A model generated the notes under the pieces. It saw nothing but the letters and a program-made list of their open reading frames with translations. It was not told the origin of the DNA and did no database searches. A DNA stretch of 64,000 bases, taken from assembly GCA_001179505.1 (NCBI GenBank), contig CDMY01000326.1, positions 55,752 through 119,751 of the forward strand, read 5' to 3'. Both the position numbers and the translations under genes were made by a program. Positions 27,425 to 47,396 of this stretch are shown here, in pieces. This DNA is from Vitrella brassicaformis CCMP3155 (lineage: Eukaryota; Protista; Chromerida). The first letter of the stretch is position 1. Every line of letters begins with the position of its first letter.

Positions 27425-29430
27425 TCAGCCGCTCAGCACCTGCACACAGACACAGCAGCGTTGGGCCACGACCAGAGATTGATGTGCCCTCTCTTACCCT
27501 CACCCACCCACCTGCCAGATTTCCATCTCATCGCACGTGAAGCTCATGGACTGCGCCAACATGCCGCTGCCCTTCTCCGTGTACCCCCCGCTGTAGCCGT
27601 CGGGCATGTCATTCTTGATCCACTGATGGCAGCGGCTGAGGTCGGCTGCAGGGCCAGGATTGGCACGGCCCAGCCACAGATAGCCGCGGGCGATGCAGAC
27701 ATTCGCACGCGGCTCGCCCTTGTCGTTCTTCACCGCCCCCTGTGTGCCGGCCACGTCCACCTGCTGCCTGTCCTCGGGTATCTCGATCTTGGTGGGCTTC
27801 TCGTACGCACCCGACAGGGAAAAGAGGAAGATGGGCACATCGTAATCGTTGGTGTCGTTGGGGTCGTCTGGTGGTGTGAGGGGGCCGTCGACGAAGCACC
27901 CGAATCGGTGTGTGTGGCCATCTCGGAGGGCGAACAGCAGGCCGCTCTTGCCGGTGACCTTGTTGAGGAAGGACTGATACCCAAACGTGTCACGACTCGA
28001 CCTGACATCGACACACAACAACGATGTCTGTGTGCCCGGCATGTCTGTCTGAGTTCACTTGTACAGCAGCGACGGCGCCACGGCGATCCTCTTGTCGGCC
28101 ATCTTCATCACCGCCAGCCACTCGTCGGCCGTCTTGATCAAAGCGGACGCCCCCGCCGCCCCACCGACAGGCGGCACCGTGTTGAGGCCGTACATTCCCA
28201 ACTCGACACCGAAGATGGCCTTCTCGTGCGCCGCCACCACCGGCGGATGGACGAACCGGCCAGACGGCATCACGGCCAAACGGCGGGCAAAGTCCACGAT
28301 GAGCTGCAGAAATCTGAGCGACGTCTGGCGGGCCTCCTGATCGGGCCACTGATCGCTGAAGAACAAAAAACCACACACACATCGATGCTGTGTGTGCCGG
28401 GGGTCTTATGACACCCACATACACACACACACATACACACACACACACACAGGCACATAGGACACCACACAAGATCCCCAGCGTTACGGTCCTTACGGAT
28501 TGTATCGCCTGACGAGGGCATGGTTCGGTCCGAGGTAGGCCAGATTGCGACGCAGGATCGACACCTGCTCGTCCTCGACAGTGAGTGACATCACCGCGAT
28601 GTCCTCCTCGCTGCTGTCCCCCTTGACGAACGGCCGCATGGCCGTCAGGACGGCCTCCATCTTTTCCTTCTGCCTCTGCAGCTCCTCGCGGACGAGCCAG
28701 TAGCTGCTCATGTACTGCACTATCTTCTCAAACGCCTCATCTACTCCCTCCCTGTCACCACTGCCCCCATCTCGCCCCTCTTGGACGTTCGCATGAGCCA
28801 TGTCCATATCGGCCTGCTCGGCTCCCCCTCCAGCTGCCCCTGCCGCTGCCGCTGCAGCCGATGTGGCCATGGCCTGTGGCTGCTCCTCGACGTCGATCTC
28901 GCCGGCCAAGCTCTGCATGAAGAGGGAGTGGTACTCCGAGTATGAGGGATCTTCACTTTGGGGCGAATGGATGGCGACCTCGTCCAAATGGGGGCTCTCG
29001 AGCAGCGCCAGTTCGTCGCGCAGCCAGCGGAAATACGCCGGGTGCATCTCGAGGAAGGGCAAGTTGTTCTCGTCCTTCGGCAGCTGGTCGGTGAAGTGCA
29101 GCAGCAGCGTCGAGAGGTAAGTCGTCTTCATCTTGCGATGCAGGAGCCGCTTCACCGAGATGGAGAAGACCGTGCCGCCCACGTTGAGCTGCATGCGGCC
29201 GTCCTTCTGCTGCGGCTCGATGGTGCCTCCGTTGTCCGTGATCAGCTGCTTGATGCTCCCAGCCAGCGCCTCGATTTCCTTCTCCGCCAGCTGTTTTGCC
29301 GTCCTGGTGATCTGGCTGAAGGTGTCCACAGAGGTAGCCGCGGCCTTGACGGAGATGCATGGCCATCTTGGCGGCCGACCCCAGCCCGTCTACCGCATTG
29401 GCTGCCTCCTTCACGAGCGCATCTCACGGC
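27425..29430 (-). CDS. BTB-BTB-TLDc family copy 4 (subfamily B); TLDc intact, possible frameshift near 29357 at the 5' end
   Basis: QLNVGGTVFSISVKRLL...YLSTLLLHFTDQLPKD...FLEMHPAYFRW, QWPDQEARQ...VDFARR, and an intact TLDc ORF 27500-28042. No in-frame ATG between the stop at ~29391 and the GTG ORF start at 29329. Confidence 0.85.
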
Positions 29431-29612
29431 CACTCGTCACGCTGCGGAGCTGCGATGGGGCGGCGATGGACTCACCACCGGCTGCGTTGGCCATTGCTAA
29501 ATCTGGGGAATGGCAGATTCCGCTTGCTTTGCTGCCGTTGGAGCTCGCAGCAAACCGTTGGCACGTCGGGTGATGGAGAAAACCCTGCAGGAGGAAGGCA
29601 GAGATGGATGGA

Positions 29613-31791
29613 ATGGGTAAGAAGAGGAGGGCCGAAGGGCCGCCGCCCTTTGCGGCGGCAGCAGCGGCAGGAGCGTCGGCATCCGATGTGCTGACGGGCT
29701 CGGCCAGTGTGGACGTCATCATCTCCCGCTGCAGCAACAGCCTGGAGGGCTTGCAGGAGCACACAGCGAGCGCCATCCGTGACAGAAAGGAGGAGGTCAA
29801 GGCCGTGACCGAGGAGATACGGACCATGGTCACTGACAAAGGCGGTGTTGGGGGCGTCGCTGAGAAAGATGGGGTCATCATGGTCAATGCTGGTGAGACG
29901 CAACAGGCCGAGGGTATCTGTGTCTGTCCGTCAATCTCTCTCGTTTTGTCCGTGTCGTTGTACTTAGGCGGTCAGGTGTTCCCTGTCAAGCGCACAGCGC
30001 TGCTGCGGCCGTATATGAAGCGGCGGTACATCTCAGTGCTGTTGATGTACCATGAGGGTGGCCTGCCGAAGGACGCCGACGGCCACATCTACCTCGAGAC
30101 GTCATCGGCCTTTTCTTTTTTCCTGGACAAGATGACCCTCATCGACACCGGCCGCACCATGGCCATCGAGCTGCCGGCGTCCAAGGCGGCCGACCCGCTG
30201 TACGCCGACTACCACTCCCTCTTCATGCGCAAGATCAACTGCTACTCGGCCCCCCCGCAAGCGCTCCCTGCAGCAGCAGCACCGATGGAGGTCGACGGCC
30301 AGGGGGAAGGGGGTGGGGAGGGGACTGTAGCTGACGGTGTGGAGAGAGCCATGAAAGATACCATGGCGGCATTCGAGCAGCGCCTGCGCGCCGACGCCGA
30401 GGCGTACAAGGCGCTGGTGCGGCAGAGGGATGAGATCGCGACGTTCCTGACGGCCATGGCGCCTTTCCTGTGCAGTGGCGATGGCGAGGCGGACAGCATT
30501 CTCAGCCTGACGGTCATGGGCCGCCCGGTGTTGATCATGCGGAAGACGCTCGAGCGCCTAGGCCACAATCACGCTCTGCTGACACGGTTCTTGACGTAAG
30601 TCAGACACACAGGGGCGAGAAGGGGGACGGGACGGCGGAACCCTGGAAACGCTTCGAATGGATCTTTTCTCTCTGTTTGTTTGCCTGTTCAGGATGCCCC
30701 AGCATTTGGGTGGTCACGATGTCGACCAGACCCCATCAGAGCACTTCGTCACGACAGTCGACTTCGCCCGCCGAATCGCGACCCTGCCGCACAATCAGCT
30801 CATCCGCCCCCCGCTTGTCGAGGAGGGCGACGAACGGCTCGTCAAGGAGGACATCGTAAGTGACATAGAGAGATGGAGGGAGGCACACACACATGAAGGA
30901 GCAGCTGTGTTGGTCATGTGTGTGTGTGTGTCAGGAGACGTATGGCTTGAAGTACGAGCCCCTCTGCAATGGCGTGACGGGTGGCGACTTCGTCATCGAG
31001 ACGGCCGAGGAGTGGGGCAAAGTCATCAAGATGACCGGCAAACACTCACCCACCGTCACACTCATCTACAAGTGAGCCAGCAACAGCCAGAGAGGGAAAG
31101 AGACACACAGACATGGCTGTCGTGTGTGTGTGCCGTTATCAGGTCGAGTCGCGACAGGTTTGGGTATTCCTCATTCCTTAACAAGGTGGTGGGCAAGAGC
31201 GGCCTCCTCTTCGCCCTTCAAGATGGCCCCACTCACCGATTCGGTGCCTTCATCGACGGCCCACTCACACCGCCAGACGACCCCACGCAGGCCAACATCT
31301 ACAAGGTGCCCGTCTTCCTCTATTCGCTGTCGGGTGCGTACGAGACGCCGACCAAGATCGAGCTGCAGGAGAAGGACCAGCAGGTGGAGGTGGCCGGCAC
31401 ACAGCTGGCGGTGGAGGACGACGATGACGAGTCGACTGCCGATGTGTGCATTGCTGGCGGCTACCTCTGGCTTGGCTACGGTGATCCTGGACCGGCGGAC
31501 GACCTCAGCAGCTGCTATCAGTGGATCGAGAGGGACAAGCTGCCGGAGGGCCACATTGACGACAGCGATATTGACGACGAGGAGGAGGATGGCACGATGG
31601 ATGACGGTCGCCGCACGCTGGCCAGCACGATCGAATTCGAGTGCACTGAGATGGAGGTGTGGCACATCACAGAGGTCAGCGAGAGGCAGCGAGGGCAACA
31701 AGCAGAGAGAGATCGGAAAACTGCATTTGATTCCTGTACCCATGTGATGTGTATGTCGCTGTGTGTGTGTGCGCAGGAGGTCAACGCCTGA
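29613..31791 (+). CDS. BTB-BTB-TLDc family copy 5 (subfamily C), apparently intact
   Basis: Spliced VNAG|GQVFPVKRTALL...YISVLLMYHEGGLPKD, LTVMGRPVLIMRKTL, VDFARR, GLKYEPLC...LIYK|SSRDRFGY TLDc, last exon EVNA*. Confidence 0.88.
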
Positions 31792-33699
31792 TGCACTGGG
31801 ACAGGCGTGAAAGGGGCGGAGGGGTGGGAGGGGCGGAGGGGTGGGCGTTCCGTGGGGGACAGGAGAGGGAGGGGGGCGAGGGCCGCCTCTTTCCTTTGCC
31901 TGAAGTGCCTTTTGCGCTGCTCTCACTCTTTTCATTAAGACCTATGTGCTACTTGGCCTTTATGCGGCTCTTATGCTGGCGGTGCGGTGCTGGTAGATAG
32001 CTGATCGGTGCCCCACAGCCCCCCAGGGTGTATACGTTTACGCTTGTCTGTACTCTGTAGCTGCTGCTTGATGTGGTGTCTGTGTGATGCATGGTATCAT
32101 GTCGTCATCGATCGGGGGAGGGGCACATGTGTGTGTGTTGTGCGCCGTGTTTGATTAACGCCTGGGTCACATTATGGGTGACATGAGCGGCTCTCTATTT
32201 GTCTACCGCTTCCTGGGGATGGTCCATGCCGCTGTGATGACAGTCTGCAAGCCGGCGGATCGAGGAAGAAGTTTTCCTATGTAATGTATGTGTGTGCAGA
32301 CATGTCTCTGTGTCTGTGTGTGTATTGTACACACAGAGAGAACCCCATAGCCTCGCACTGCCCGTGATCAAACAACCACTAGACACCGACACGCTGCTGT
32401 GCCGTTTGTTTGATGACGGACGATTCGCTGTTTACTTTTTGATTCGCTCGCCGTCTGTACGATTGGTTGGCGCTGTGCTGGAAAAAGGGTTTTTGTGTTC
32501 CATCGACAGGGCATGTGGCTGCCGTGTGGTGCATGTGTAGAGCGTGAAGTCTTTTCATGCATGCGACGGTGCAAGCAAGTCGGTCATCGTCTGTGTACTG
32601 TCCATGGACGGGGTGATGTTTGTTGATGGACGACAAGCACTCGATGTGATGGCCGGCAGACAAAGGGAGGGAGGGAGGGACCATCTTCTCCTGTCTATGT
32701 GTCTATCGTGTGCACTGATCACGGTCATGGTCACTGCATCCATGCTGGCTGCGTGAGTGGCACACCATGACCGACATGCACAAGTTGGTCATCTCACTCG
32801 GCCGGCCCTTTCGCGATGTCATGACATCGATCTGTGCAATGGATGCTTGGGTGAACAGTGAGTGTCTGCATCGGTCTATTGTGTTTATGTGTCTACACAG
32901 AACAACAGGTACTGTACCTGCACCGTCCGTCCAGGGTGACGACCAGCAAAAACTGAACACAGCCAGAAGCACCACCTTCTATGAGTCAAACAGCCGCCAT
33001 TTTTCGGGAGTCGCCCACCACACTGCTTGTGAGGATGCTGGCGGGTCCAACAGGCGACAATCTGCCCAATCTCTCGGCGATGTGCCGGATCGCAGTCCAC
33101 TGTTTCAGCTCGCATCTCCCTCATTCTCAGATGAACGGCTCGAGCGGCTCGTCTGTTGTCCTGCCTCCCCATCTCGCATCGCCGGCAAACATGAGAGGCG
33201 TCGATGCCGCCAAGCGGCTGGTGGCCGAGCTGGAGAAGCGGACACTCATCGTCAACCGACTGATCACAAGCACTGGGGGACAGCAAACGGTCACTGAGCC
33301 GCTGGATGGAGAGATCGAGATCAACGTGGGCGGGACGGTGCTGTGTGTGCCGCGCAAGCCGCTGCTGCTGCCCGGCGTGAGCGACTCGTTCATCGCCTAT
33401 CTGCTGCTGCACCATCTGGATGGGCTGCCCAAGGACACAGACGGCCACCCGTTCCTCGACGCCGATCCAATCTATATGGACTGGTGAGCCAAGCGACACA
33501 GAGGGGAGGGAGGGAGGGCAGACGAACTCACACAGAATAGTGTCTGTTGTGTTTCTTGTGTCAGGCTGTGCAACGAGGTGGCCAACGTCGGCGCCGCGGA
33601 TGCGCAGGCCGAGACCCATGAGATCAAGCTGACCGGTGACCACAGCACCGACAACGCGTCGCTCTTCTGGCACGAGATCTTCTTCGCTAACAAGATAGA
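31790..33699 (+). repeat. Segmental duplicate of ~44240-46039 (spacer plus start of an A-type gene)
   Basis: Collinear matches such as cacattatgggtgacat, gcggatcgaggaagaagtttt and tgtacctgcaccgtccgtccagg; ~33140-33699 is nearly identical to ~45520-46039. Confidence 0.85.
33191..33699 (+). CDS. BTB-BTB-TLDc family copy 6 (subfamily A2), 5' part only, truncated by gap
   Basis: MRGVDAAKRLVAELEKR...EINVGGTVLCVPRKPLL...DPIYMDW|LCNEVANVG, near-identical to copy 8. Confidence 0.85.
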
Positions 33700-33999
33700 N
33701 NNNNNNNNNNNNNNNNNNNNNNNNNNNNNNNNNNNNNNNNNNNNNNNNNNNNNNNNNNNNNNNNNNNNNNNNNNNNNNNNNNNNNNNNNNNNNNNNNNNN
33801 NNNNNNNNNNNNNNNNNNNNNNNNNNNNNNNNNNNNNNNNNNNNNNNNNNNNNNNNNNNNNNNNNNNNNNNNNNNNNNNNNNNNNNNNNNNNNNNNNNNN
33901 NNNNNNNNNNNNNNNNNNNNNNNNNNNNNNNNNNNNNNNNNNNNNNNNNNNNNNNNNNNNNNNNNNNNNNNNNNNNNNNNNNNNNNNNNNNNNNNNNNN
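33700..33999. other. Assembly gap (300 N)
   Basis: Run of N. Confidence 1.
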
Positions 34000-34479
34000 G
34001 GCGTCAAGGGCGTCACACCACCATCCACAGGTGCGGAGAGACCTCGACACATCACTCACAAGGAGGGGCGGAAAGGCAATCGACCTGTGTGTGTGTGCTG
34101 ATGGTATGCAGGCCCTCGTTTTGCCACACTGCAGCACACCAGCCATGCAATGCATCGACACACGCAAGCAAACAGGTACTAACACATACATGGAGATGAG
34201 AATAAGCCAGACAGGAAGATCATAGCGTACTTACACAAGACGCTGCTAGGTAGGTCCGCACACGCCATCCATTCCACTCGTTCATTCATTCCGTGCTGTG
34301 TCGGTGTGCCTGCCTGCCTGCTTGCCTGCAGATATGTGTGTGATGAGGCGACTTCGGTCGTAGCCGAACGAAGAGAATAGAAACGAAGGAAAAGGAGAAA
34401 CGGAAAAGAAAGAAGAAACCTTAGAGGGCGAGGCCGCCGAAGGCGGCCGAGCCCAGGCTTCGACTGCACAAGGGGACAC

Positions 34480-37170
34480 GGCTCGATTGAACCTCAGGTT
34501 GCGCAAGTTGGGCGGCTGGATGGTGAAGTTGATGCGTGGCAGCACAAAGGTGTTCTACTGTGAGCTGCCTCCCCCGACCTTCTGCACCTCGATCATGCTG
34601 CTGCCTCGCGGCCCCTTGTAGATGACCTTCTCGTTGTTGGACAGCCCGTAGCGCCAAGACATGTTGCGCAGCACCAGGCATACCACGCCTCGCTTGAGCT
34701 GCAGAGTGTGGGGCGGCTTGGGGGACTCGTTCTGACCCGCGAGGAAGTCCTCGTCATGGTGGCCTGCCTGGTAGTCCTCCTCAAGATAGCGCTCGCGAGC
34801 GACATGCGTGCAGAGCTGGCCGTCCATGCGGTCGATGATAGTGTTGTTGATGGCGTCCACTGCCTCATTCGTCGGACACAGGATGGCTCGGCTGGCGCAT
34901 GCTCGAGGATCACGCTCGTAGAGCCGGTCAGGGAATGCGAACTCGATGGCGTCCTCCTGGCTGTGGGAGTGTTGCTGATCGAGCTCGATCCAGTCGGAGG
35001 CGTCTTCGGGGCGCAGGGAGGGGTCCTTCTCAACGAATGAATCTGCACGAAACGTCGCTGGCGCCCGTCGCCCACCTGAAGAGACACGCATACAGGCAGA
35101 CCCAGACACATGCACCATGCGATGTACACACACATGTCCGGATGCGGTACCTTGAGGCACATGTTCGTGTATGCGGTGTCATTCTTTGAGCGCATGATCT
35201 GCTTCAACTCACGCACAATGAACTCGTCGTACAGGTCAGACGACCGCAAAGACGCGTGGAAGATTGTTGTCTCGTTGCAGTCCTCGTGTCGCGGCAGCAC
35301 GAGCGGGAGCTGCCGGAAGTCGCCCGCACAAACGAAGACCTTGCCGCCGAACGGCAGATTGCATTCCATGATGTCTTGCAGCATAAGGTCGACCGCTTCG
35401 ATACACTTCCGGTGCGCCATGCTGCAGGAAGGGATGGATGGATGGATGCAAACGAAGAGACTGGACGCGTTATGATGTGCGGCCCCGAACCTACCTGATC
35501 TCGTCCCACACGATGACCTTGGCCTTTCGCAGCAGGTCGGCCTTCTGCGAAGTTCTGCTCACTGTGCAGCGCAGGTTCTCCTTCATTATGTCGTCCACCA
35601 CGGGGATCTTATGCAGGCCGTGAGCAGTGTGTCCACCGACATAGTTGAGAGCCGCGAGTGCAGTGGTTGCGGAGGCGAGGGCGATGTCGCCGCGGCTGCG
35701 CACGGCCGAGAGCACGCAGCGCAGAACAGTCGTCTTCCCCGCACCACCTGACCGGTCGCAGACACAGGAGGAACGATGAGCGATGCTTGCCTGCATGGAA
35801 CCATTTGTGTACCTGGCGCCTTGATGAGCAGACAAAAAGGCTCCGGGCTGTCACCGTTGCGGGGGTAGATGTGGGCCATGATGTCCTCAAACACTTCCTT
35901 CTGCTCGGCGACCTTCTCGACCATGTCATGCACCCTGTCGTAGCTTTGCCTGATAGTGGTGAGGCTGCCGTAGCTCTTGCGCTCGGTTTGCTCTTCAGCA
36001 GGGATGTGCTGTGGCTCTGGCGGGCCGCATTCTGTGTTGGTCATGCCGCACTCCTGGAGGTCCTCACAGATCTCCCGTAACAGGCGCTCGTAAGCTGCCT
36101 CAGGATCGTCGACTTCCTCGTAATCGTCCACCATAAACTCGCGGTACTTCTCCAAGATGTCGGCGGCGGCACACTCGTGGTTGAGGATCAGCACGACGAA
36201 TAAGAAGCGCAGCTGATAGGGCAGGACAGCTTGCTCTTCGACGGCCTCTCTCATGACGTTCTCGACGTAGGTCTGCCCCTCCAGTAGCCCTGCTGCCTTC
36301 GCAGCTTGGCTGAAGGTTGAGTAGCAGGTCCCATCGATAGTGCGAATCGCCTGAGAGACACATTGAAGACACACAGCAACGATCGAACCATCGCTGCCAT
36401 ATGCATACTCTGTGTCTCCGCCACTTACCTCAAAGCTCCCCTTTGCCTGAGAGCCCTTCAGAAGCAGTCGAAGGTAGTAGCGCTCTCCCTGCATCGCGAA
36501 GGCGCTCTGCAGCCGCGTGCAGTGCTGTTCCCAGCGCCGCCGCTGATAAAAGCCGTGGCCCGTCTTGGTGCGCATCTCACGGGCTGTCGCCGACTCGTGG
36601 GCATCAGCATTCTCGCCCGCCATATCCGCTTCTTGTGGGTCTCGAGCTCGGTCCTTCTTCATCGCAAAGCGACGGAAGAACTGCTGATAAGTCATCTGAT
36701 CGAAGTCCACGTCCTCATTGTTGATTCTCCTGGTGGCGTCCGGCCGATTCAGCCAGTGATCGATCATGCTGAGGCCGGGCATGAAGACCCGCCCCGTCTC
36801 GCCTCGCCCCGACACTCGTTGAACGACTGGTCGCTCGGCCGGGAGGTAAACGAGCAGCGTCGTCACGGACGGCTGAGTCCAGTGGATCTGATGGCCGAAG
36901 ATGCGGTGGCACGCCTCGCTGGCACAAAGGACGCGGCCCTGCTGGTAGTCGCGGATCTCGTCTCGTTGTTGCTCTTGCGCTGGATGTGCAGTCTGGTGGT
37001 TGGTGAGGAGCGACGCCACCTGTTGCCGGCGTCGCTTCTTCTGCTGCTCGGATTCGGAAGCCTCGCCGGCATCCGCCTTGGCCGCTCGCTGCTTGCGCTT
37101 CTTCTCGTGCTCCACGCTGATGAGAAAGGCGCTCTTCTCGGGCTTGTACATGTACTTATACCTGCAGACC
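34480..37170 (-). pseudogene. Helitron PIF1-family helicase region (exons split by introns), with premature stop and missing C-terminal motifs
   Basis: DEIRDYQQGRVLCASEACHRIFGH, YYLRLLL, Walker A GAGKTT, WDEI, GDFRQL, ILCPTNEAVDAINN. In-frame TAG at 34555-34557; sequence ends at PRINF...NLRFNR without QFP/AMTxxKSQG. Confidence 0.85.
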
Positions 37171-37254
37171 GACACACGCAAGCAGCAGCAGAGAAGCCAC
37201 TCCAATGTGGGTTTCTCTCTTGGCTTGTTGTCTCACTGTCTGCGTTGTCTCTGC

Positions 37255-39308
37255 CTGCGTACATGTAGCTGATGACATTCGTAGAGGCAGCGCAGTCGAC
37301 GTACAAATGACAGTTGAACTCGGCAAGCAGCTCGGGGGAGTACGGTGGCACCCACCTATCCTCCTCGTGGCGTCGCCGGTACACGCAACGGCCTCGCCCG
37401 TCGAAGTGCGTCTCGTCGCAGAGCGGCTGAGGGAAGCCGTACTTGCACCGCTCGGCCACTGGCTCGTTCGCATTCCTGCAGCGGTGATACTCGCGCAGGC
37501 TCGCCTCGTCCCTGCATCGCGCGCTGCACTTGTGGACCATGAAGCTCTCCACGAGCTTCCTGAGCTGCGGATTATGCCGAGGCATCTCGCCGCAGACGAA
37601 CTTGTCCACATCAGCACCGCAGCTCGGGTGCTCTTCATTGCGCACGCTGATGTGCGCGTGGCTGAGCCCTCGCTTCTGGTACTCGATCACAGCCATCAGA
37701 TAGAGAGCTCGGCTGAGGGGGCCGTCCCGGAGACGCTGCAGCAGCGAGCGTAGCTTGAGGTGGAAGACACGACTGGTCAAGTCGGGGCGATCATACGCTG
37801 TTTGCCCTGCGCAGCCACAGCCAGCCGAACGCACATAGGCATTGATCCATGCAAGTAAGCCGCCGGATTGTGTCTCCCTCACTCACTGCCACACTTACCC
37901 GATTGAAGCTTCTCCTGGATCTCGGGCCAGTTGCCATTGCATGTGATGATGATGAACCACGACGGCTTGCCGTACTGCGCAACGATAGCAAAGGCGTCCT
38001 GACAGAGTCGCTTGTAATACCGCTCGCTGCCCACGAAGCTGCCTGGCAGCAGAACAAAGCCTCCCTTGGCCTGCTCCGTCACATCCACCCCATCACATTC
38101 GAAGTCATCCTGCATTTCTCGCGCAGCGCTGTCCCGCTCCTTCTCTGCCTCGCTCAGCTTCAGCACGTCGCTGCCGCATGTAACGCATCTGTGTCCAGTA
38201 GCGGTCCTACCGCTTCACGTGCCCCTCCAGGATGTCGCGGTCCGTCCACGCCCGCGTGTAGAACTTGCGATCGATCATGTCCTTAATCTCGGAGCTCTCG
38301 GCAAACAGATGGAAGTTGCCTCTGAAAAGGAGACAGGCACACACAGCAACACAGGGATGCACTTGCCCTGATCTTCGCGTGGCTGTCAGACAGACAGCGT
38401 GTCTCCTCTTGCCGACCTTTATTCCACAGGCATCGATGGATACCACCCGGGAGTGCCCTTCAGGAACAGCAGCGGGTACTGGAGCGGCTCGTACACATGC
38501 GAGAGCACATCGACGAACTCCATCGCATCGCCTCTGTGCCCCGACCTCTTCAAAGAGATGAAGACCTTCCGCTGCTGTGGAAGGTAGGCGGACGTCGAGC
38601 AGGGCAGGACGATGCAGACGTCGTCTGCTTCTGGCTTGAACTTGAACTGCAGGATGATGTCCTGCCGGCCGTTCTCTGCTAACCGGCCGAAAGCATGAAG
38701 GTCTCGTACGAACGGATTGTTCTCATGGAGTATTTCCTGACACAGTGACAGACACACACAAAGCACCCGCTGTCTGTCTCTCCCTGCACGCCGTTAAAAG
38801 ATGTGTGTCACCTTGAGTTGATCGATTAGGTACTTATAGATCTCTTGCTCTCTCGCCGACCTGCCGCCCATCTCGCCGACTCGTTTGTCCAGCTCTTTTT
38901 TGGCTCCAGCATTATCGAACATAAGCCCTACAATCGGATGGTCCTCGGCTGACAGGATGCGATGATAGACACGGCCGTGGATCGTCATGTTCCCCCAGTC
39001 GTGGGGGATTGACGCTGCCAAGTCAGAGTTGCCATCGAATCCGATCGCTGTCATGGCGAAGCTGTTGTTCAGCGACAGCGACTTGTCTCGCAGCTGCTTG
39101 CCATATCGCGACGCCACCAGATCCTGCAGCTCTTTTGGCACCGGAAGGTTGTCGAGCACCGTCTTGCCTTGCTGACAGCAGAAAGATGCACCATCTCCCT
39201 CCCACACCAGAGCATCGCAGTGCGGGCACGCCTTGCGCTTCGGCAGCCGATGCAAGGCTGGGAAGGCCCTCGTCGGATCCAACAGGGGCTGATCGCATGC
39301 TGCGCTCT
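37255..39308 (-). pseudogene. Helitron Rep (HUH endonuclease) region
   Basis: SLNNSFAMTAIG, IHGRVYHRI, YEPLQYPLLFLKGTPGW, motif 1 FIIITCN, RPDLTSRVFHLKL and EYQKRGLSHAH. In-frame TAG at 38207-38209 and a frame change near 38170. Confidence 0.9.
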
Positions 39309-40219
39309 CTGCAAACACACAGATAGACACGGACACACACATCAACCGAGCACGACGGAAACTTGCACACCGACCCACCGGGATAGTGCCGCTTGACCAA
39401 CTCTCCGAGGCATCGGACAGCCCGGTCGACGCCGCTTTCACCGCCCGCCGAGTGGCACCCCTCACCCGAAAGCGCCTCACGATCGTCAACTGCAACGGGT
39501 CCTTAGGCTTCAAATGCACTTCGAAGCGATGCCTCGTGAAGCTAAGCCAGCACAGCCGCCTGCTCATCCCCTGCGCCTTGTGGTGCTCTCTCAGCAGCTC
39601 TTGCGCGAGCCGCGTCGCACTCTCGCGCGTCAGGTCCGGCTCGCGTACGTCGGTCTCCATCTCAACCGCGCCCTCCTCGCTATCGCTGTCCATGCCAGGA
39701 CAGGACGCATAGTACTCCTCGTACTTGCCTCGGATGCTCTCGAAGGCCACCAGTAGCCCCTCCTCTGTCATGGGGCGCGGCTTCTCGCGGAAACAGACAG
39801 GCTTGGGCAGCAGCTCACCAGATGCTGGGTTGTCGGTTATCCTGCAGTGAAAGCGCTGCGCCGTCCAGTTCCAGGATATCGGTGGGCGCTGCGTGATGAG
39901 GCACGTTTGACGATACGCGGCAATGAGAGCGTTGGCTCGCTCTTCTGCTTCTGAAACGCAAACAGAACCACACGTGACCGTCACCGTCTGTTCATATCCT
40001 CTTCCTCGCATGTCACCTTCGGCTCTCAAGTAGCGAGGCTTTTCGTTCGGCGCCCGCTCGTCAACCTTGACCCTTTTAGCGGCCCTACCCGATCGAGACA
40101 CAGTCGATGACTGTCGCCGTCGCTTCGTTTTCCCGGAAACGCTGCTCTTCGCGCTGACCGCTGGCCGCGACGATGCTGCCGGCTGTGTGGTGGATGGCTG
40201 TTGCTGCTGCTGCATGGCT

Positions 40220-40730
40220 CGCCGGACGTAGTCGAAGTGGTGATTCTCGTAGTTCAATAGGATCATAGTCGATCGGTCATCAAAGGCACCAGACTGGCAG
40301 TCGAAGACGCCTGGCTGAGACCCACGCCCCACGAGCTCATACAAATAACTGGCGAGCCGCTTGTTCCCGGAATCGAGCACAATCACGACGCACTTAAGCC
40401 CGAGCGCATACAACGATGCCGCAACAACACCCTCATCTGGCCATGTTGGCGCTTGCAAGCCCCACCGGATCCACCACTCCTGTGCGACCATCCCTCGGAG
40501 CTGTGCGAGAGCATTCGGAAACATGTCCCTCAAGTACACCACCTCCTGACCTTGCGGGAGCTGTGCCGTGGCGAACTCTCTCTCCAACACCGATAAGATG
40601 TAACGCTTCAGCAGCAATGGGTCGCTCGTTGGGTGCACGCACCCGCTGCACGTGTCTTGTAGCTGCTGTGCTAGACAATGGAAGAAGCAGTGGTTGTCTT
40701 TCGGCTGCTCGATGACCATCAAAGGGATGC
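40220..40730 (-). other. OTU-like cysteine protease domain within the Helitron ORF
   Basis: IEQPKDNHCFFHCLAQQL matches the OTU DGNCxFxAL Cys motif; a W-rich middle segment (WWIRWG...WPDEG) and YENHHFDY match the HY/FD His motif. Confidence 0.7.
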
Positions 40731-41835
40731 GCAGCGAAGCGAGCTGCCTCGTCAAAGACCCTCCCGTCTCATCGAACGCTACCCCTCCCTCCACTGGCTG
40801 ACGAAGCACCTGCTGCACAGCAGCTCTCGCCTGCTCCAACTGCCGCCGCCGAGCCAGCTGCGGGCCGCTCGGCGCCCTCGAAGGGCGCCGCTTTCGCGCA
40901 TAAGGGTTGCCGCGAATTGCACGAATCAGTTGGTTTCGCCTCTTCCGCAACCCACGGGACGATCGCAGCCACACAATGTCCTGCAGCAGCCCAGTGGGTA
41001 TGTCCCGCAGCGAGTCATGAGAACGCACACCTGAAGCAGCACCATGAAGCAGTAAAGCAAATGAGTGCCGGCAAGACAAACACAGAAATGCAATGTCCCC
41101 CACTCCTTCATTTTCGTTTTCATTTGCATTCTCACCATCCAGGAAGCGTCAAAACGCCTTGGCATCGACACCCCCCCTCGAGTCAGCAGCGACTGATGCC
41201 ATGGAGGACACCCACTACCCTGCCAACGCTTACGTGCGTAACGTAGGAGTACCAAGGGCTTATCGCTAACAGCAGTAGGAAGCTCGACACCGTCCTCGAG
41301 ATGAACTGGCCCATCTGTACTCGTCCCTGCCACATACACACATACGCGCAGACAATGAAGAGAATGAGTGTCCCCTCCCCCCGACAGATACGCCGCGTAC
41401 GTTGTACGAACCTGGCCTGCCAGCGAACGACGCAGCACCTGCACATGTATAATTACAGCCTGCCACGCAGGTGAAGCCCTCGCGAGAGAGAGGGCGGCCT
41501 GCAGCCACACACAACAACGCACTCCGCGAGCACTGGCCATCCGTCCTGCGCCCATTACCATCTTCAGTTCCCAGCAGGACGCACACAACCACACAGAAGA
41601 GAAGTCCAAAGAAGGCACCCGTCCTCAGCATCATCACCCTTCACACCTCAGCAGGATCACTCGTTACGGTTGCCATTTATGCCTTTGTTGCCTCTACAGC
41701 TATGGCCCAAGGACGCCCCGAATGACCCAGATTCTGATCGAATTGCACTATGCTCGCGAGATACTGTGCCGCGCGACTCAAGAAGCAGACCGTTCGAACC
41801 ACCAGCAGGCGCTTGACATCGTGATGAAGCCGAAA

Positions 41836-41869
41836 AAGAAACCCTAAATGTGTACCTTTAGGGTTTCTT
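41836..41869. other. Perfect 13-bp inverted repeat (hairpin) built from telomere-type repeat, at the Helitron right boundary
   Basis: aagaaaccctaaa-tgtgtacc-tttagggtttctt, followed by CTAG|T at 41880-41884. Confidence 0.9.
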
Positions 41870-41912
41870 GCACGGTTAGCTAGTGGGGAGATCTGGGCCA
41901 ATGGGACGTTCA

Positions 41913-41932
41913 AACCCTAAATCCTAAACCCC
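41913..41932 (+). repeat. Short interstitial telomere-like (CCCTAAA) repeat
   Basis: aaaccctaaatcctaaaccc. Confidence 0.6.
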
Positions 41933-42097
41933 AACCGAGCTGCTTCTGGCTTCTCTGCGGCAACCTATAAAGACGTGCGCCGAGGTGGCGTTATCAACCT
42001 TATTACTGTGCCCGCTCCAGCTCGAGCTCCTCGGGATCCACGGCCGCCGGAGGCGGCCGGCACAATACTAGTCAACGGCAGAAAGGCAATCAAAGCG

Positions 42098-44242
42098 ATG
42101 AGCATCATGTCGGGCGCGTCCCTGTCGCCGCCCATGACGGGCTGTGAGGCGGCCGACAGGCTGATCCGCCGTGCCCGCAGGTCATTTGACGACATTGTGG
42201 CGGCCAAGGAGAGGGCCCAGGCGGACGTGGAGGCCATCGCCAATGAGATGTCCGCCATGGTGGCGGCCAAAGGCGGCGTGTGGCAGCTCACCGACACCGA
42301 GGGAGAGATCATGGTCAATGCCGGTAAAGACGGGACGGAACAGACAGGCAGAAATGGGCATATGTGTGTGGTGCAAATGTCCGTCACTCTCTCACTCTCT
42401 CTGTGTGTGTGTGTGTGTCTGACCAGGCGGTGTGGTCTTCCCAGTGAGTCGGCGCGCCCTGTTGATGCCCTTCATGAAGCGGCGATACATCTCAGTGCTG
42501 CTGATGCATCACGCGGGCGGCCTGCCCAAGGATCCCGACGGCCACCTCTACCTCGAGACGTCATCGGCATACTTCGAGGCCTTCTGGGACGAGCTGACCC
42601 TCTACCAGACTGGCCGTACCGACACCGTGACCCTGCCGGCATCCAAGGCGTCAGATCCCCTTTACAACGACTACCACGCCCTCTTCATGAGTGAGATCAG
42701 CTGCTACTCGGCCCCCCAGCAGACCTCCGCTGCAGCCACGGCCGCGCCGATGGAGGTCGACGGCCACACACCCGACACACAGCCGGCCGACACATCCGAT
42801 GAGATGCAGCAGCACATCCGTGAGTGTGAGGAGGCCCTCCGGGCCCATGGGGCCGCCATGGTGGGGCTGCGGGCGGTGCGCGATGACATCCAGCGGTTCC
42901 TGACGGCCATGGAGCCCTTCTTCGCCAGCCGACACGCCGAGGACAATGCCATTCTGAGCCTGACCATCCACAGCCGGAAGGTGTCGATCATGCGGAAGAG
43001 CCTGGAGCGGCTCGGCCACAACCACCCCCTGCTGACACGCTTCTCGACGTAAGAATGACACACAGACACAGAAAGAGGGGGACGAGGGGATGATGCGCAT
43101 TGGTGTTGGTGTCGGTTCTGATGGTGGTCAGGACGCCCCCCTGTTTTGCCGACCGTTCTGTGCGGCAGACGCCCACCAAGTGCTTCATGGCGGCGGTGGA
43201 GTTTGCGCGCTGCATCGCCACCATGCCCACCGAACGGCTTATCCGCCCGCCACTCGTCGAGGAGGGCGACAAGCGTCACTTCGTAGAGGACATCGTAAGT
43301 GAGACACACAGAGAGGGCGGCACACACAGGAAGGAGCTGCTGTGTTGGTCATGTGTCGTGTGTCAGGAGATGTATGGGTTGAAGTACCAGCCCCTCTGCA
43401 ATGGCGTGACGAGTGGCGACTTCGTCATCGAGACGGCCGAGGAGTGGGGCAAAGTCATCGACATGACCGGCAAACACTCACCCACAGCCACACTCATCTA
43501 CAAGTGAACCCGGCCAGAGGGAAAGAGACACACAGAGATCGTTGTGGTGCATGTTGATGTCAGGTCGAGTCGCGACACGCTTTCGTATGCCTCCCTCTTC
43601 AACAAGGTGGTGGGCAAGGGCGGCCTCCTGTTCGCCATCAAGCAGGGCGACACACATCGCTTCGGATGCTTCATCGACGGCGAGATCGAACCACCTGCTG
43701 ACCCCACAGAGACCAACCAGTACAGGGCGCCAGTCGTCTTCTTTTCGCTGTCGGGTGCGTACGAGACGCCCACGAAGATCGAGCTGCCGGAGGAGAGGCA
43801 GTGGGTGGAGGTGGCCGGCACACAGGGGGCGGTGGAGGACCCAAAGTGGCTGCCGCTTGCCAATGTGGCCATCGCCCGCGGTTACCTGTGCCTTGGCTTT
43901 GCCATGCCAGGTCCGGCGGCCGACCTCAGCCGCTGCTGTCAGTGGATTGAGGAGCAGCAGCTGCCGGCGGAGGGATACAGAGGGAATCGTAGATGGATGG
44001 CTAGCACGGACATTGATTCCCTCGACTATAATGGTGCGGTGGTCGGTTCCCTCGGCAGCAGTTTCGTTTTCACCTGCAGGGAGCTGGAGGTGTGGCACAT
44101 CACAGCGGTGAGTGGGAGGCAGCGAGGAACAAAAGCAGAGAGAGAGAGAGAGAGGCGGAAACAACAGTGCACTTCATTGACTTGCTGCATCCTCATGTGA
44201 TGCGTGTATGTCGCTGTGTGTGTGCAGGGGACCAGCTGCTGA
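42098..44242 (+). CDS. BTB-BTB-TLDc family copy 7 (subfamily C), apparently intact
   Basis: VNAG|GVVFPVSRRALL...YISVLLMHHAGGLPKD, LTIHSRKVSIMRKSL, VEFARCI, GLKYQPLC...LIYK|SSRDTLSY TLDc, last exon GTSC*. Confidence 0.88.
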
Positions 44243-45568
44243 CGCACGGCAGCGGAGGAAGACATGAGGCGGCGGGGTGGGGGTGTGGTGGGGAACAGGA
44301 GAGGGAGGGGGCGAGGGCCGCCCCTTTCCTTTGCCTGAAGTGCCTTATGCGCTGCTCTCACTCTTCTCATAGAGACCTATGTGCTACTTGGCCTTTATGC
44401 GGCTCTTGTGGTGGCGGTGCGGTGCTGGTAGATGGCTGATCGGTGCCCCACAGACCCCACTGTTTCTACGTTTACGCTTGTCTGTACACTGTAGCTGCTG
44501 CTTGATGTGGTGTCTGTGTGGTGCATGGTGTCATGTCGTCATCGATGGGGGGAGGGGCACATGTGTGTGTGTGGTGCGCCGTGCTGATGAACGGCTGGAT
44601 CACATTATGGGTGACATCAGCGGCTCCATATTTGTCTTTCTGCTTCCTGGGGATGGTCCACGTCGCTGTAATGACAGTCTGCAAGCCGGCGGATCGAGGA
44701 AGAAGTTTTCCTGTGTGACGTACGTGTGCAGACGTTTGTGTGTGTGTGTGTCCATATTGCATTGTGCACACAGCCAGAGAAGCAGACAGCCCCGCACTGT
44801 TCGTGATCAAACAAGCGATAGACACTGCGACACGCTGGTGTGCCGTTTCTTTGATGACGGACGATTCGCTGTTTGATGCGCTCGCCGTATGTACGCGATT
44901 GATTGGCGCCGTGCTGCGGTGCGATGTAACGTGCTCTTGTGTTCCATCGACAGACCGACCACGTGGCTGCCGTGGGGTGCATGTGTAGAGCGTGAACTGT
45001 TTTCATGCATGCCACGATGCAAGCAGGGCGGTCATCGTCTGTGTGCTGTCCGTGGACGGGGGGATTCAGGGAGCATCTGTGTGTGTGTCATTCGCTCCGC
45101 CTGTCTGTCTATGTGTCCATCGTGTGCACTGATCCTGGTCACTCCATCCATGAGGCTGCGTGAGTGAAGGAATGACTCCCTTCTGCACAAGTTGTTGACA
45201 TCGATCTGTGCAATGGATGCTTGTGCGAGCAGTGAGTGACTGCATCGGTCTGTTTTGTCTGTGTGTCTCCACAGAACGACCGGTACTGTACCTGCACCGT
45301 CCGTCCAGGCTGACGACTAGCAAACATTGAATACAGCGAAAAGCACCGCCTTTTATGAATCAAACAGCCGCCATTTCTCGAGAGGCACCCACCACACTGC
45401 TTGTGAGGATGCCGGCGGGTCCAACAGGCGGAAACCTGCCCGATCTCTCGGCGAGTGCCGGATCGCTGCACTTGAGGCTCGCATCTCGACGTATTCCTTC
45501 CGGTCATTCTGAACGGCTCGAGCGGCTCGTCTGTCGTCCTGCCTCCCCATCTCGCATCGCCGGCAAAC

Positions 45569-47396
45569 ATGAGAGGCGTCGATGCCGCCAAGCGGCTGGT
45601 GGCCGAGCTGGAGAAGCGGACTCTCATCGTCAACAGACTGATCACTGCCAGCGGAGGACAGCTGACGGTCACTGAGCCGCTGGATGGCGAGATCGAGATC
45701 AACGTGGGCGGGACGGTGCTGTGTGTGCCTCGCAAGCCGCTGCTGCTGCCCGGCGTGAGCGACTCGTTCATCGCCTATCTGCTGCTGCACCATCTGGATG
45801 GGCTGCCCAAGGACACAGACGGCCACCCGTTCCTCGACGCCGATCCAATCTATATGGACTGGTGAGCCAAGCGACACAGAGGGGAGGGAGGGAGGGCAGA
45901 CGAACTCACACAGAATAGTGTCTGTTGTGTTTCTTGTGTCAGGCTGTGCAACGAGGTGGCCAACGTCGGCGCCGCGGATGCGCAGGCCGAGACCCATGAG
46001 ATCAAGCTGACCGGTGACCACAGCACCGACAACGCGTCGCTCTTCTGGCACGAGATCTTCTTCGCTAACAAGATAGATCTCAACATCACGCGCCAGGACC
46101 GCCAAGATGCAGACATGGGCGAGGCATCAGCAGACGCCAGTACCCCTCTGGGCGCTCTCAATCGCAGCGCCGTGAGCGTCGAGAAGGCCCTGGACGACAT
46201 CAAGACGGCCGTGCGGCAGGTCATGGATGAGCATCAGCAGCTGCTCAAGTTCCACCGTGTGATGGGGCCGTTCCTCAAGTCGGCTGATGGCCAAGGCGAT
46301 GAGATCAAGGGCGTGCGTCTGATGGGCAAGACGGTGTCGACCACTGAGGCCACACTGACATTCATCGGCACTGACAAACGACTGTACACCACATTCGACA
46401 GGTGACACACAACGACGGGATGGCAAACACACGTCCAGGGGGGACATTCATCTCATTGGCCGCTTCTTGTGTGTTGCAGCACTGGGCCGGTAACGTGCAT
46501 CTCGCCCGCCCACTTCATGAAGGTCGTCGACTTCGCTCGCCGACAGCGAGTCGCATCCGTTGGCGACATCGTTAAGCCGCCCACGGCCCCAAATCAGCGG
46601 CAGCTCACCACCGACTGCTCCATGTACGGCCTCACCACGGAGAGTGTGAGCGGGCCCGTCCTCTGGGCCGACGAGATGCAGTGGATCATCGAGTTGACAA
46701 AGAAACGCAATGTCACGACCACACTGCTCTTCAAGTGAGTGGCAAAGGAAGGCGTGTGGGTGCGGGGGGCTGCATCGTGTGTGTGTGTTGATCAGGTCCA
46801 GTCGTGACACTTTTGGGTACCAGTCCTTCCTCAACAAGGTGACCGGCAAGAGCGGCCTGCTGTTCGCCCTCAGACATGGCGACACACACCGATTCGGCTG
46901 CTTCATCGACGGCCAGCTCAAGCCACCAAACGACCTTACACAGACGAGCGGCAAGTACGACGTGCCCCTCTTCTTCTACTCGCTCAGCGGCGCGTTCACT
47001 AAGCCCACCAAGATCGAGCTGCCGGGGCAGGGGCAGAAGGTTGAGGTGGCCGGCACACAGGGGGCGGTGAGGAGCAACAAGGGCCAGCCGATTGGCAAGG
47101 TGGCCATCGCTCGCGGCCGTCTTTGGCTGGGGTTTGCTCGGCCTGGTCCGGCGGCCGACCTCAGCAGCTGCCAGCAGTGGATCAGCAAGGATGACATTCC
47201 CAACGGATATGGCGGCGAGATCAATACGAAGGATGAGACCTTCCTACACCTAGCCAGTCGACCTGACTTGACGTGTGATGAGATGGAGGTGTATCACCTG
47301 CAGGTAAACCAGTGGGATGAAAAGGCAACCGAAACACAGCTACATGGGTGTGAATGCGTGTTCGTATGTGCCTCTCTGCAGGTCAACGGCGCATGA
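45569..47396 (+). CDS. BTB-BTB-TLDc family copy 8 (subfamily A2), apparently intact
   Basis: Exons ~45569-45862, 45943-46401, 46480-46735, 46796-47303, 47382-47396, all phase-compatible; TLDc ends FTCDEMEVYHLQ-like|VNGA*. Confidence 0.9.

What the first reader, a model, noticed from the sequence alone, without database searches (positions are those of the whole stretch)
38794..41103. Helitron RepHel fused to an OTU-like protease and AP2-like repeats
Seen: upstream of the Zn/Rep region the same ORF has an OTU-like domain (KDNHCFFHCLAQQL ... YENHHFDY). Two segments, PPISWNWTAQRFHCRIT (~39835-39890) and RLCWLSFTRHRFEVHLKPKDPLQLTIVRRFRV (~39460-39565), are each flanked by amphipathic helices (EAEERANALIAAYRQ, ESATRLAQELLREHH). 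Known: OTU proteases occur in some Helitrons; ApiAP2 domains (GVxW...xRWxA/V...KxFxV...helix) are the main transcription-factor family of apicomplexans and chromerids. Inference: a Helitron has captured, or is a vehicle for, AP2-type DNA-binding domains, which bears on ApiAP2 origins. A deubiquitinase-bearing element inside a putative ubiquitin-adaptor cluster is also notable.
Basis: partly seen in the sequence, partly recalled or inferred. Interest (0 to 1): 0.75.

Follow-up and report, generated by a model that had tools for sequence, protein, structure and literature searches.

The report
Helitron with OTU protease and orphan modules
A rolling-circle transposon (Helitron) gene in the alga Vitrella brassicaformis carries a divergent OTU-type protease, which is already known for Helitrons, and two small conserved modules found only in Vitrella Helitrons that have an AP2-like strand-strand-strand-helix shape but cannot be shown to be AP2 DNA-binding domains.

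Summary

OTU is supported. The D136-x-x-C139 and H289-x-D291 loops are invariant in paralogs. A PDB profile search hits about 18 nairovirus OTUs, and structure searches rank OTU domains first. OTU upstream of RepHel is already published, so this part is ordinary.

The two "AP2-like" segments are real modules. Each is helix, three strands, helix, with strongly basic strands. They are conserved in two diverged Vitrella Helitron families, with dN/dS 0.26. A search of 1.84 billion proteins found them only in Vitrella Helitron proteins.

AP2 membership is not shown:
- Pfam, PDB and PHROGs give nothing.
- Profile-profile P ranged from 0.29 to 0.024, depending on the AP2 alignment.
- The nearest language-model clusters are AP2 but score below the lead threshold.

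There is no specific tie to ApiAP2. The flanking BTB/TLDc array looks coincidental.

The "single ORF" runs through two in-frame-looking introns and a frame change.

This scan examined the same modules on the sister copy (s1-215918) and reached the same conclusion.

The parts
38794..41103 (-). Mechanical 769-aa ORF: the 5' part of the Helitron gene, read through introns
   Evidence: 99% identical to public Vitrella model P0001, 'Helitron helicase-like domain'
40774..41031 (-). Basic N-terminal region, aa 25-110, conserved in copies on C908 and C182
   Evidence: tblastn
40219..40731 (-). Divergent OTU cysteine-protease domain, aa ~125-295. Candidate catalytic residues are D136, C139 (40687-40689), H289 (40237-40239) and D291.
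   Evidence: invariant columns in A2; PDB profile hits to vOTUs; Foldseek and VIA top rows all OTU; paralog P0004 named OTU
40017..40218 (-). Gln/Ser-rich basic linker, aa 296-362, with KTKRRR and KRVK stretches
   Evidence: sequence
39951..40016 (-). 66-nt GT-AG intron, open in frame
   Evidence: P0001 junction RAE|EAEE; nucleotides
39706..39950 (-). Module A, aa 385-466: helix, three strands, helix
   Evidence: AF2 model; conserved in L002, L005 and L007
39637..39705 (-). Acidic disordered linker, aa 467-489
   Evidence: pLDDT <50
39424..39636 (-). Module B, aa 490-560: helix, three strands, start of C-terminal helix. 10 Arg and 2 Lys in 40 residues around the strands.
   Evidence: sequence
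39309..39423 (-). End of module B helix plus intron zone. This copy changes frame relative to L002 and family 2. The public model removes 39398-39465 and 39309-39375 and keeps a 22-nt mini-exon.
38794..39308 (-). Cys/His-rich Helitron N-terminal region, aa 599-769
   Evidence: 40-70% identical to copies on C200, C115, C571 and C227
38419..38766 (-). Next Helitron exon (EILHENNPFVRDL...)
   Evidence: contiguous in P0001 and P0002
36863..38166 (-). Rep endonuclease exons, with Helitron_like_N and the HUH motif SHAHISV
35586..37205 (-). Exon with the Tyr motif YKYMYKPEK and the Rep-helicase linker
   Evidence: matches P0002
34555..35835 (-). Pif1-type helicase exons, with Walker A GGAGKT and the 2B domain

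Best explanation
This is one copy of an intron-bearing autonomous-type Helitron gene of Vitrella brassicaformis, running on the minus strand from about 41.1 to 34.5 kb. Its order is: N-terminal basic region, OTU protease, linker, module A, module B, Cys/His-rich region, HUH Rep endonuclease, Pif1 helicase. The OTU is a divergent domain with its candidate catalytic residues all present. Most likely it either removes ubiquitin-like modifiers from the transposase or its partners, or cleaves the long protein in cis (inferred). The two helix/three-strand/helix modules are a lineage-specific, selected part of the transposase. Their strands are rich in Arg, Lys and Trp, and they sit directly in front of the DNA-binding N-terminal region. 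They most likely act as sheet-mediated nucleic-acid-binding modules that help the enzyme recognise its ends or its target (inferred). Module A has an AP2-like topology, but homology to AP2 is unproven. This copy has a frame change at the end of module B and may be non-functional.
For: Genome and gene identity. Rep, HUH, Tyr and Pif1 parts. OTU: invariant D-x-x-C and H-x-D; about 18 vOTU chains at E 9e-4 to 0.03, all on the Cys loop; Foldseek top hits OTU at probability ~0.8; VIA rows 1-38 all OTU; a 41%-identical paralog is named OTU by UniProt; Pfam OTU scores E 0.064 on the family-2 paralog; OTU upstream of RepHel is published (PMC11417382). Modules: conserved at 31-40% identity in two families, in the same order OTU-modules-Zn; dN/dS 0.26 against 0.04 for the Zn region; AF2 gives H-EEE-H twice with strand pLDDT 70-80; only 3 proteins, all Vitrella Helitron models, among 1.84e9 representatives.
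Confidence: 0.7

Rival explanations
1. One reading: the modules are true, very diverged AP2/integrase-type DNA-binding domains carried by a Helitron.
Confidence: 0.32
2. The modules are dsRBD-like (alpha-beta3-alpha) RNA- or duplex-binding domains.
For: The topology is exactly alpha-beta-beta-beta-alpha. Foldseek's top ten PDB hits are tandem dsRBD proteins (NF90, R2D2, MLE, TRBP, DGCR8) at E 0.014-0.14. RNase III and DRBM proteins appear in BFVD.
Against: Probabilities are <=0.2 and TM is <0.2. No dsRBD appears in the VIA top 50 of either search. Pfam dsrm gives no hit. The dsRBD signature at the start of helix 2 (a KKxAK-type basic patch) is replaced by acidic TEEG in module A (sequence). 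Family 2's module A exon lacks helix 1.
Confidence: 0.15
3. The modules are a lineage-specific fold used for protein-protein contacts or oligomerisation, with no nucleic-acid role.
Against: There is a strong excess of Arg, Lys and Trp on the predicted strands, and the modules sit next to the DNA-binding N-region (sequence; inference).
Confidence: 0.2
4. The ORF is a chance open frame in GC-rich DNA, and the motifs are coincidental.
For: Many overlapping long ORFs occur in this 58% GC window.
Against: There is protein-level conservation with stop-free frames in several copies, dN/dS is well below 1, and a public gene model covers the region.
Confidence: 0.01

Closest known systems
Helitron-like elements with an OTU domain upstream of RepHel (HELIANO survey, PMC11417382; earlier described for Helentron/Helitron2)
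   Same: The OTU cysteine protease is encoded 5' of the Rep-helicase. Extra protein- or DNA-binding domains are stably kept at fixed positions.
   Different: This OTU is too divergent for Pfam. The element is from a chromerid alga and has many short introns. Between the OTU and the Zn region it has a tandem module absent from the text of that survey ('AP2' occurs 0 times in the main text; Supplementary Table S11 was not read).
Nairovirus vOTU / OTUD-type deubiquitinases (PDB 3PHW, 7JMS, 4BOU, 6W9R)
   Same: The Cys loop matches (P-x-D-x-x-C-F-[FY]-H-[CS]-L-A), there is an H-x-D His loop, and these are the top structural neighbours.
   Different: Identity is 10-20%. There are insertions between the loops, the model is of low confidence, and no activity is known.
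AP2/ERF and ApiAP2 DNA-binding domain (PF00847; PfSIP2 6SY0)
   Same: A three-stranded sheet followed by a helix, basic and aromatic strands, tandem arrangement, and weak collinear profile similarity for module A.
   Different: There is no HMM match, the conserved GV...W.A.W and FS motifs of Vitrella ApiAP2 are absent, each module has an extra N-terminal helix in family 1, and module B shows no signal.
dsRBD (PF00035)
   Same: Alpha-beta3-alpha topology, arranged in tandem.
   Different: There is no sequence signature, no VIA match, and the start of helix 2 in module A is acidic.

Membership tests
Helitron (RepHel rolling-circle transposon) | Rep endonuclease domain with HUH and a two-Tyr motif | tested here: met
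   PF14214 at E 4e-16 and 1e-11. SHAHISV and YKYMYKPEK are visible in the ORFs.
Helitron (RepHel rolling-circle transposon) | Pif1-family helicase 3' of Rep on the same strand | tested here: met
   PF05970 at E 5e-18 and 3e-15, and Pif1_2B at 9e-6.
Helitron (RepHel rolling-circle transposon) | Defined termini (5' TC, 3' hairpin + CTRR) or HLE2-type ends | tested here: inconclusive
   The 3' side runs into an N gap. DNA searches found shared repeats at both sides but no boundary.
OTU cysteine protease (PF02338) | Pfam HMM above the gathering score | tested here: not met
   No hit for the window protein at E<=10. E 0.064 for the family-2 paralog only.
OTU cysteine protease (PF02338) | Cys loop D-x-x-C and His loop H-x-D/N | tested here: met
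   D136, C139, H289 and D291 are invariant in 3 paralogs. The loop aligns to vOTU catalytic loops.
OTU cysteine protease (PF02338) | OTU fold | tested here: inconclusive
OTU cysteine protease (PF02338) | Isopeptidase or protease activity | not testable with these tools
   Needs a biochemical assay.
AP2 / ApiAP2 (PF00847) | Pfam HMM match | tested here: not met
   No hit at E<=10. A local AP2 HMM scores the modules like shuffled sequences.
AP2 / ApiAP2 (PF00847) | Three-stranded antiparallel sheet packed on a C-terminal helix | tested here: met
   The AF2 model has E26-29, E34-41, E48-56, H64-84 and E132-140, E143-150, E160-165, H169-178. Each module also has an extra N-terminal helix.
AP2 / ApiAP2 (PF00847) | Detectable homology by profile-profile or structure comparison | tested here: inconclusive
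AP2 / ApiAP2 (PF00847) | Sequence-specific dsDNA binding through the sheet | not testable with these tools
   Needs EMSA or a protein-binding microarray.
dsRBD (PF00035) | Pfam HMM match and the basic patch at the start of helix 2 | tested here: not met
   No hit. Module A has TEEG at that position.

The most novel reading that the evidence does not exclude
The two modules are extremely diverged AP2-superfamily DNA-binding domains built into the transposase of a Helitron lineage in the closest photosynthetic relatives of Apicomplexa. That would make it a eukaryotic transposon-borne AP2 pair, and a possible mobile reservoir related to the ApiAP2 radiation.
Probability: 0.3. Interest if true: 0.65.

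Novelty: new variant of a known kind. Interest (0 to 1): 0.38.

Why it matters
Helitrons with an OTU domain and assorted captured domains are already documented, so most of this finding is ordinary. The new element is a conserved, selected, Vitrella-specific tandem module between the OTU and the DNA-binding N-region of the transposase. If it proved to be an AP2-type DNA binder, it would be a rare case of that fold inside a eukaryotic rolling-circle transposase, in a lineage where ApiAP2 factors expanded massively. It would also give a testable handle on how these Helitrons recognise DNA. As things stand, it adds an orphan domain family and a divergent OTU to the catalogue of Helitron accessories.

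Tried and rejected
- Pfam on the whole ORF and on sub-pieces: no OTU, AP2 or dsrm hit.
- PHROGs: one irrelevant 24-residue hit.
- PDB sequence profile of the modules: 0 hits.
- Word-based protein search of the modules and of the OTU: only Vitrella's own proteins.
- Full HMMER search: 3 Vitrella proteins.
- BFVD: uncharacterised proteins plus a few RNase III/DRBM proteins.
- PF00035 in the same genome, sought in order to build a dsRBD control alignment: no match, so that control was dropped.
- Merging modules A and B into one 8-row profile gave no AP2 alignment.
- The internal-duplication test of A against B was only E 0.04-0.12.
- A first nucleotide alignment of the frame-change zone failed and was replaced by three-frame translations.
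- One alignment call failed on a coordinate slip and was corrected.
Every exon or ORF was searched by reference, so the module B helix was modelled in the genomic frame only.
- The idea that a deubiquitinase landing in a BTB cluster is meaningful was not pursued beyond confirming BTB_2/TLDc flanks, because related copies lie on six other contigs.

Full report
**Identity of the locus.** The window is contig C326:55752-119751 of a 72.7-Mb, 1064-contig assembly. The ORF is 99% identical to an NCBI/UniProt protein of Vitrella brassicaformis CCMP3155 named 'Helitron helicase-like domain' (P0001). The assembly size and scaffold number match the published Vitrella genome (PMC4501334).

The Helitron gene lies on the minus strand, in this order:
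- the 769-aa ORF 38794-41103;
- exons with Helitron_like_N (E 4e-16 and 1e-11), with SHAHISV (HUH) and YKYMYKPEK (Tyr motif) visible in the translations;
- Pif1 helicase exons (E 5e-18 and 3e-15, plus the 2B domain).

So this is a Rep/Pif1 Helitron gene broken into many short exons. The 3' side abuts an assembly gap at about 33.70-34.05 kb. The flanks are a tandem array of BTB_2/TLDc genes.

**Observation.** The ORF is not a single exon.
- The public model joins RAE|EAEE. The nucleotides show a canonical 66-nt GT...AG intron at 39951-40016 that happens to stay open in frame.
- Between module B and the Zn-rich region, the public model removes 39398-39465 and 39309-39375 and keeps a 22-nt mini-exon (LVKRHYP).
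- Three-frame translation shows that the C200 sister copy reads VKAAFQRAGRF*ELLCLHFPG in one frame, with one stop. Family 2 reads AVRGAFLALLDQKRLFMEAHYPG in one frame. The window switches frame between AVKAAS and ELVKRHYPG.
- This copy therefore carries a frame change at the end of module B, or needs an extra intron.

I built no joined or spliced protein. Each piece was searched by reference.

**OTU.** Pfam gives no OTU hit for the window protein even at E<=10. One of the three paralogs scanned reaches E 0.064. The other evidence points the same way:
- An alignment of three paralogs (61% and 38% identity) keeps D136, C139 and H142 of the loop P-x-D-x-x-C-F-F-H, and H289-F-D291 of the loop N-x-E-N-x-H-F-D-Y. 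This is the OTU arrangement of an Asp three residues before the Cys, plus His-x-Asp, as in nairovirus vOTU. That comparison rests on my own knowledge of the family.
- A profile of this alignment finds about 18 distinct nairovirus OTU chains in the PDB at E 9e-4 to 0.03, all aligned on the catalytic Cys loop (the single-sequence version is).
- The AF2 model is poor (pLDDT 64). Even so, Foldseek's first 17 PDB rows are OTU domains at probability 0.5-0.85.
- A 41%-identical Vitrella paralog is called 'OTU domain-containing protein' by UniProt.

I take the OTU assignment as about 90% secure. It is not new: OTU upstream of RepHel is reported for both HLE1 and HLE2 in the HELIANO survey (PMC11417382).

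**The two modules.** The genome holds a 52%-identical sister on C200 (modules plus Zn region). It also holds a second family, about 40% identical in the Zn region, on C571, C227 and C115. In that family, OTU segments, a linker, an intron, the two modules, an intron and the Zn region follow in the same order.

- The four-sequence alignment has 25 invariant positions, among them W28, F35, A70-F71-E72 and R75.
- Between the two family-2 copies, dN/dS is 0.26 in the modules (dS 0.21) and 0.04 in the Zn region. The modules are therefore coding and selected, though less tightly constrained.
- AF2 on this alignment (pLDDT 68; strands 70-80; linker <50) gives helix, three strands, helix, twice.
- The strand regions are very basic. 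Module B has 10 Arg, 2 Lys and 2 His against 2 acidic residues in 40 positions (sequence).
- Profile comparison of module A with module B is collinear but weak (E 0.04-0.12).
- A profile search of 1.84 billion representative proteins found only three proteins, all Vitrella Helitron gene models. The word search found only P0001. The module is lineage-restricted at HMMER sensitivity.

**Evidence against AP2.**
- No PF00847 hit at E<=10, although the same HMM finds at least 150 AP2 domains in this genome, none at this locus.
- No PDB chain at E<=10 with the module profile.
- Nothing in PHROGs.
- An HMM built from 29 Vitrella AP2 domains scores all eight module sequences like their shuffles.
- hhalign against 29-row and 22-row AP2 alignments gives P 0.29 and 0.22.
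- Module B never aligns to AP2.

**Evidence for AP2.**
- In family 2, the module A exon starts right at the first strand, so the core there is strands plus helix only.
- With a more diverse 71-domain Vitrella AP2 alignment, hhalign gives a 59-column end-to-end collinear alignment, score 14.2, P 0.024. Only 3 of 300 column-shuffled or block-shuffled versions reach that score.
- The ten nearest named ESM-Atlas clusters of module A are all AP2, but at 0.82-0.83, below the 0.9 level at which the tool says a hit is more than a lead.

These hints agree with each other, but each is within noise, and the hhalign result depends on which AP2 alignment is used. I put AP2-superfamily homology at roughly 0.3.

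**dsRBD rival.** The topology fits, and Foldseek's top ten hits are tandem dsRBDs at E 0.014-0.14. This reading is weaker: there are no dsRBDs in either VIA list, no Pfam hit, and the start of helix 2 in module A is acidic.

- 'Captured, or a vehicle for, AP2 domains': the modules are an old, integral part of two diverged Helitron families, not a recent capture. Nothing ties them specifically to ApiAP2 sequences. The claim about ApiAP2 origins is not supported.
- 'Deubiquitinase-bearing element inside a ubiquitin-adaptor cluster': the flanks are indeed BTB_2/TLDc genes. However, OTU is a standing component of these Helitrons, and related copies lie on C200, C571, C227, C115, C908 and C182. I treat the juxtaposition as coincidence. 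This was not tested further.

**Mechanism.** Shown: the domain order, the presence of the candidate catalytic residues, conservation and selection. Inferred:
- The OTU acts either as a deubiquitinase protecting the transposase or as a cis-processing protease of the long protein.
- The basic sheets of the modules bind nucleic acid and help the adjacent Zn-rich N-region and the HUH domain engage the element ends or the target.

**Earlier scan notes.** The scan examined the same modules on the C200 copy and concluded that no test identifies them as AP2 and that a stop separates them from the transposase there (s1-215918). My data agree, and I saw that stop myself. Another note reports an FKBP-like exon spliced onto that copy (s1-215924). 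The P0002 model does start with unrelated sequence, but Pfam gave no FKBP hit at E<=0.01.

**Verdict.** This is an ordinary Helitron with a known type of accessory protease, plus a genuinely orphan tandem module whose AP2 nature remains an open and testable possibility.

Noticed in passing
window 41723-42000: A dispersed repeat of about 280 bp, in two parts, is found at 83-91% identity on at least 8 other contigs (C645, C571 at 274 kb, C709, C510, C501, C430, C398, C710). There the two parts lie in opposite relative orientation. It may be a small non-autonomous element or a Helitron-end fragment.
   Followed up: no
window 34056-34435: The stretch just 3' of the Pif1 exons, abutting the N gap, is 94-96% identical to C483:10959-11317 and C874:11745-12123, and 72-78% identical to C204 and C929. 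Those loci lack the helicase part. It may be a shared 3' terminal region of young non-autonomous relatives.
   Followed up: no
L003/L006/L012 (C908:131-137 kb) and L008/L010/L014 (C571:44-48 kb): Several tandem copies of the OTU-bearing 5' segment occur in a row. On C908 they have no Rep/Zn match nearby, and the public model P0004 merges repeated units.
   Followed up: partly
window 28493-33700 and 41975-46405: The Helitron sits between, or inside, units of a tandem array of BTB_2/TLDc genes. Some segments of the array are near-identical, for example 32981-33700 and 45355-46075. An N gap at about 33700-34055 hides the junction.
   Followed up: partly
L002 (C200:166255-169800), protein P0002: The sister Helitron copy has an in-frame TGA at the end of module B. 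Its public model begins with unrelated N-terminal sequence instead of an OTU, and the contig ends about 840 nt upstream of the modules.
   Followed up: partly
genome-wide (C290, C269, C488, C708, C781 and others): At least 150 PF00847 AP2 domain matches, from 232 candidates, are strongly clustered in arrays on a few contigs. This is consistent with the published cluster of 50 paralogous apiAP2 genes (PMC4501334).
   Followed up: no
window 39951-40016, 39309-39375, about 37100-37200 and about 35800: The Helitron introns are very short (66-80 nt), GT-AG, and rich in TG/GT. They often remain open in frame and translate as 'CVCV/SVSV' strings, which inflates the mechanical ORFs.
   Followed up: partly
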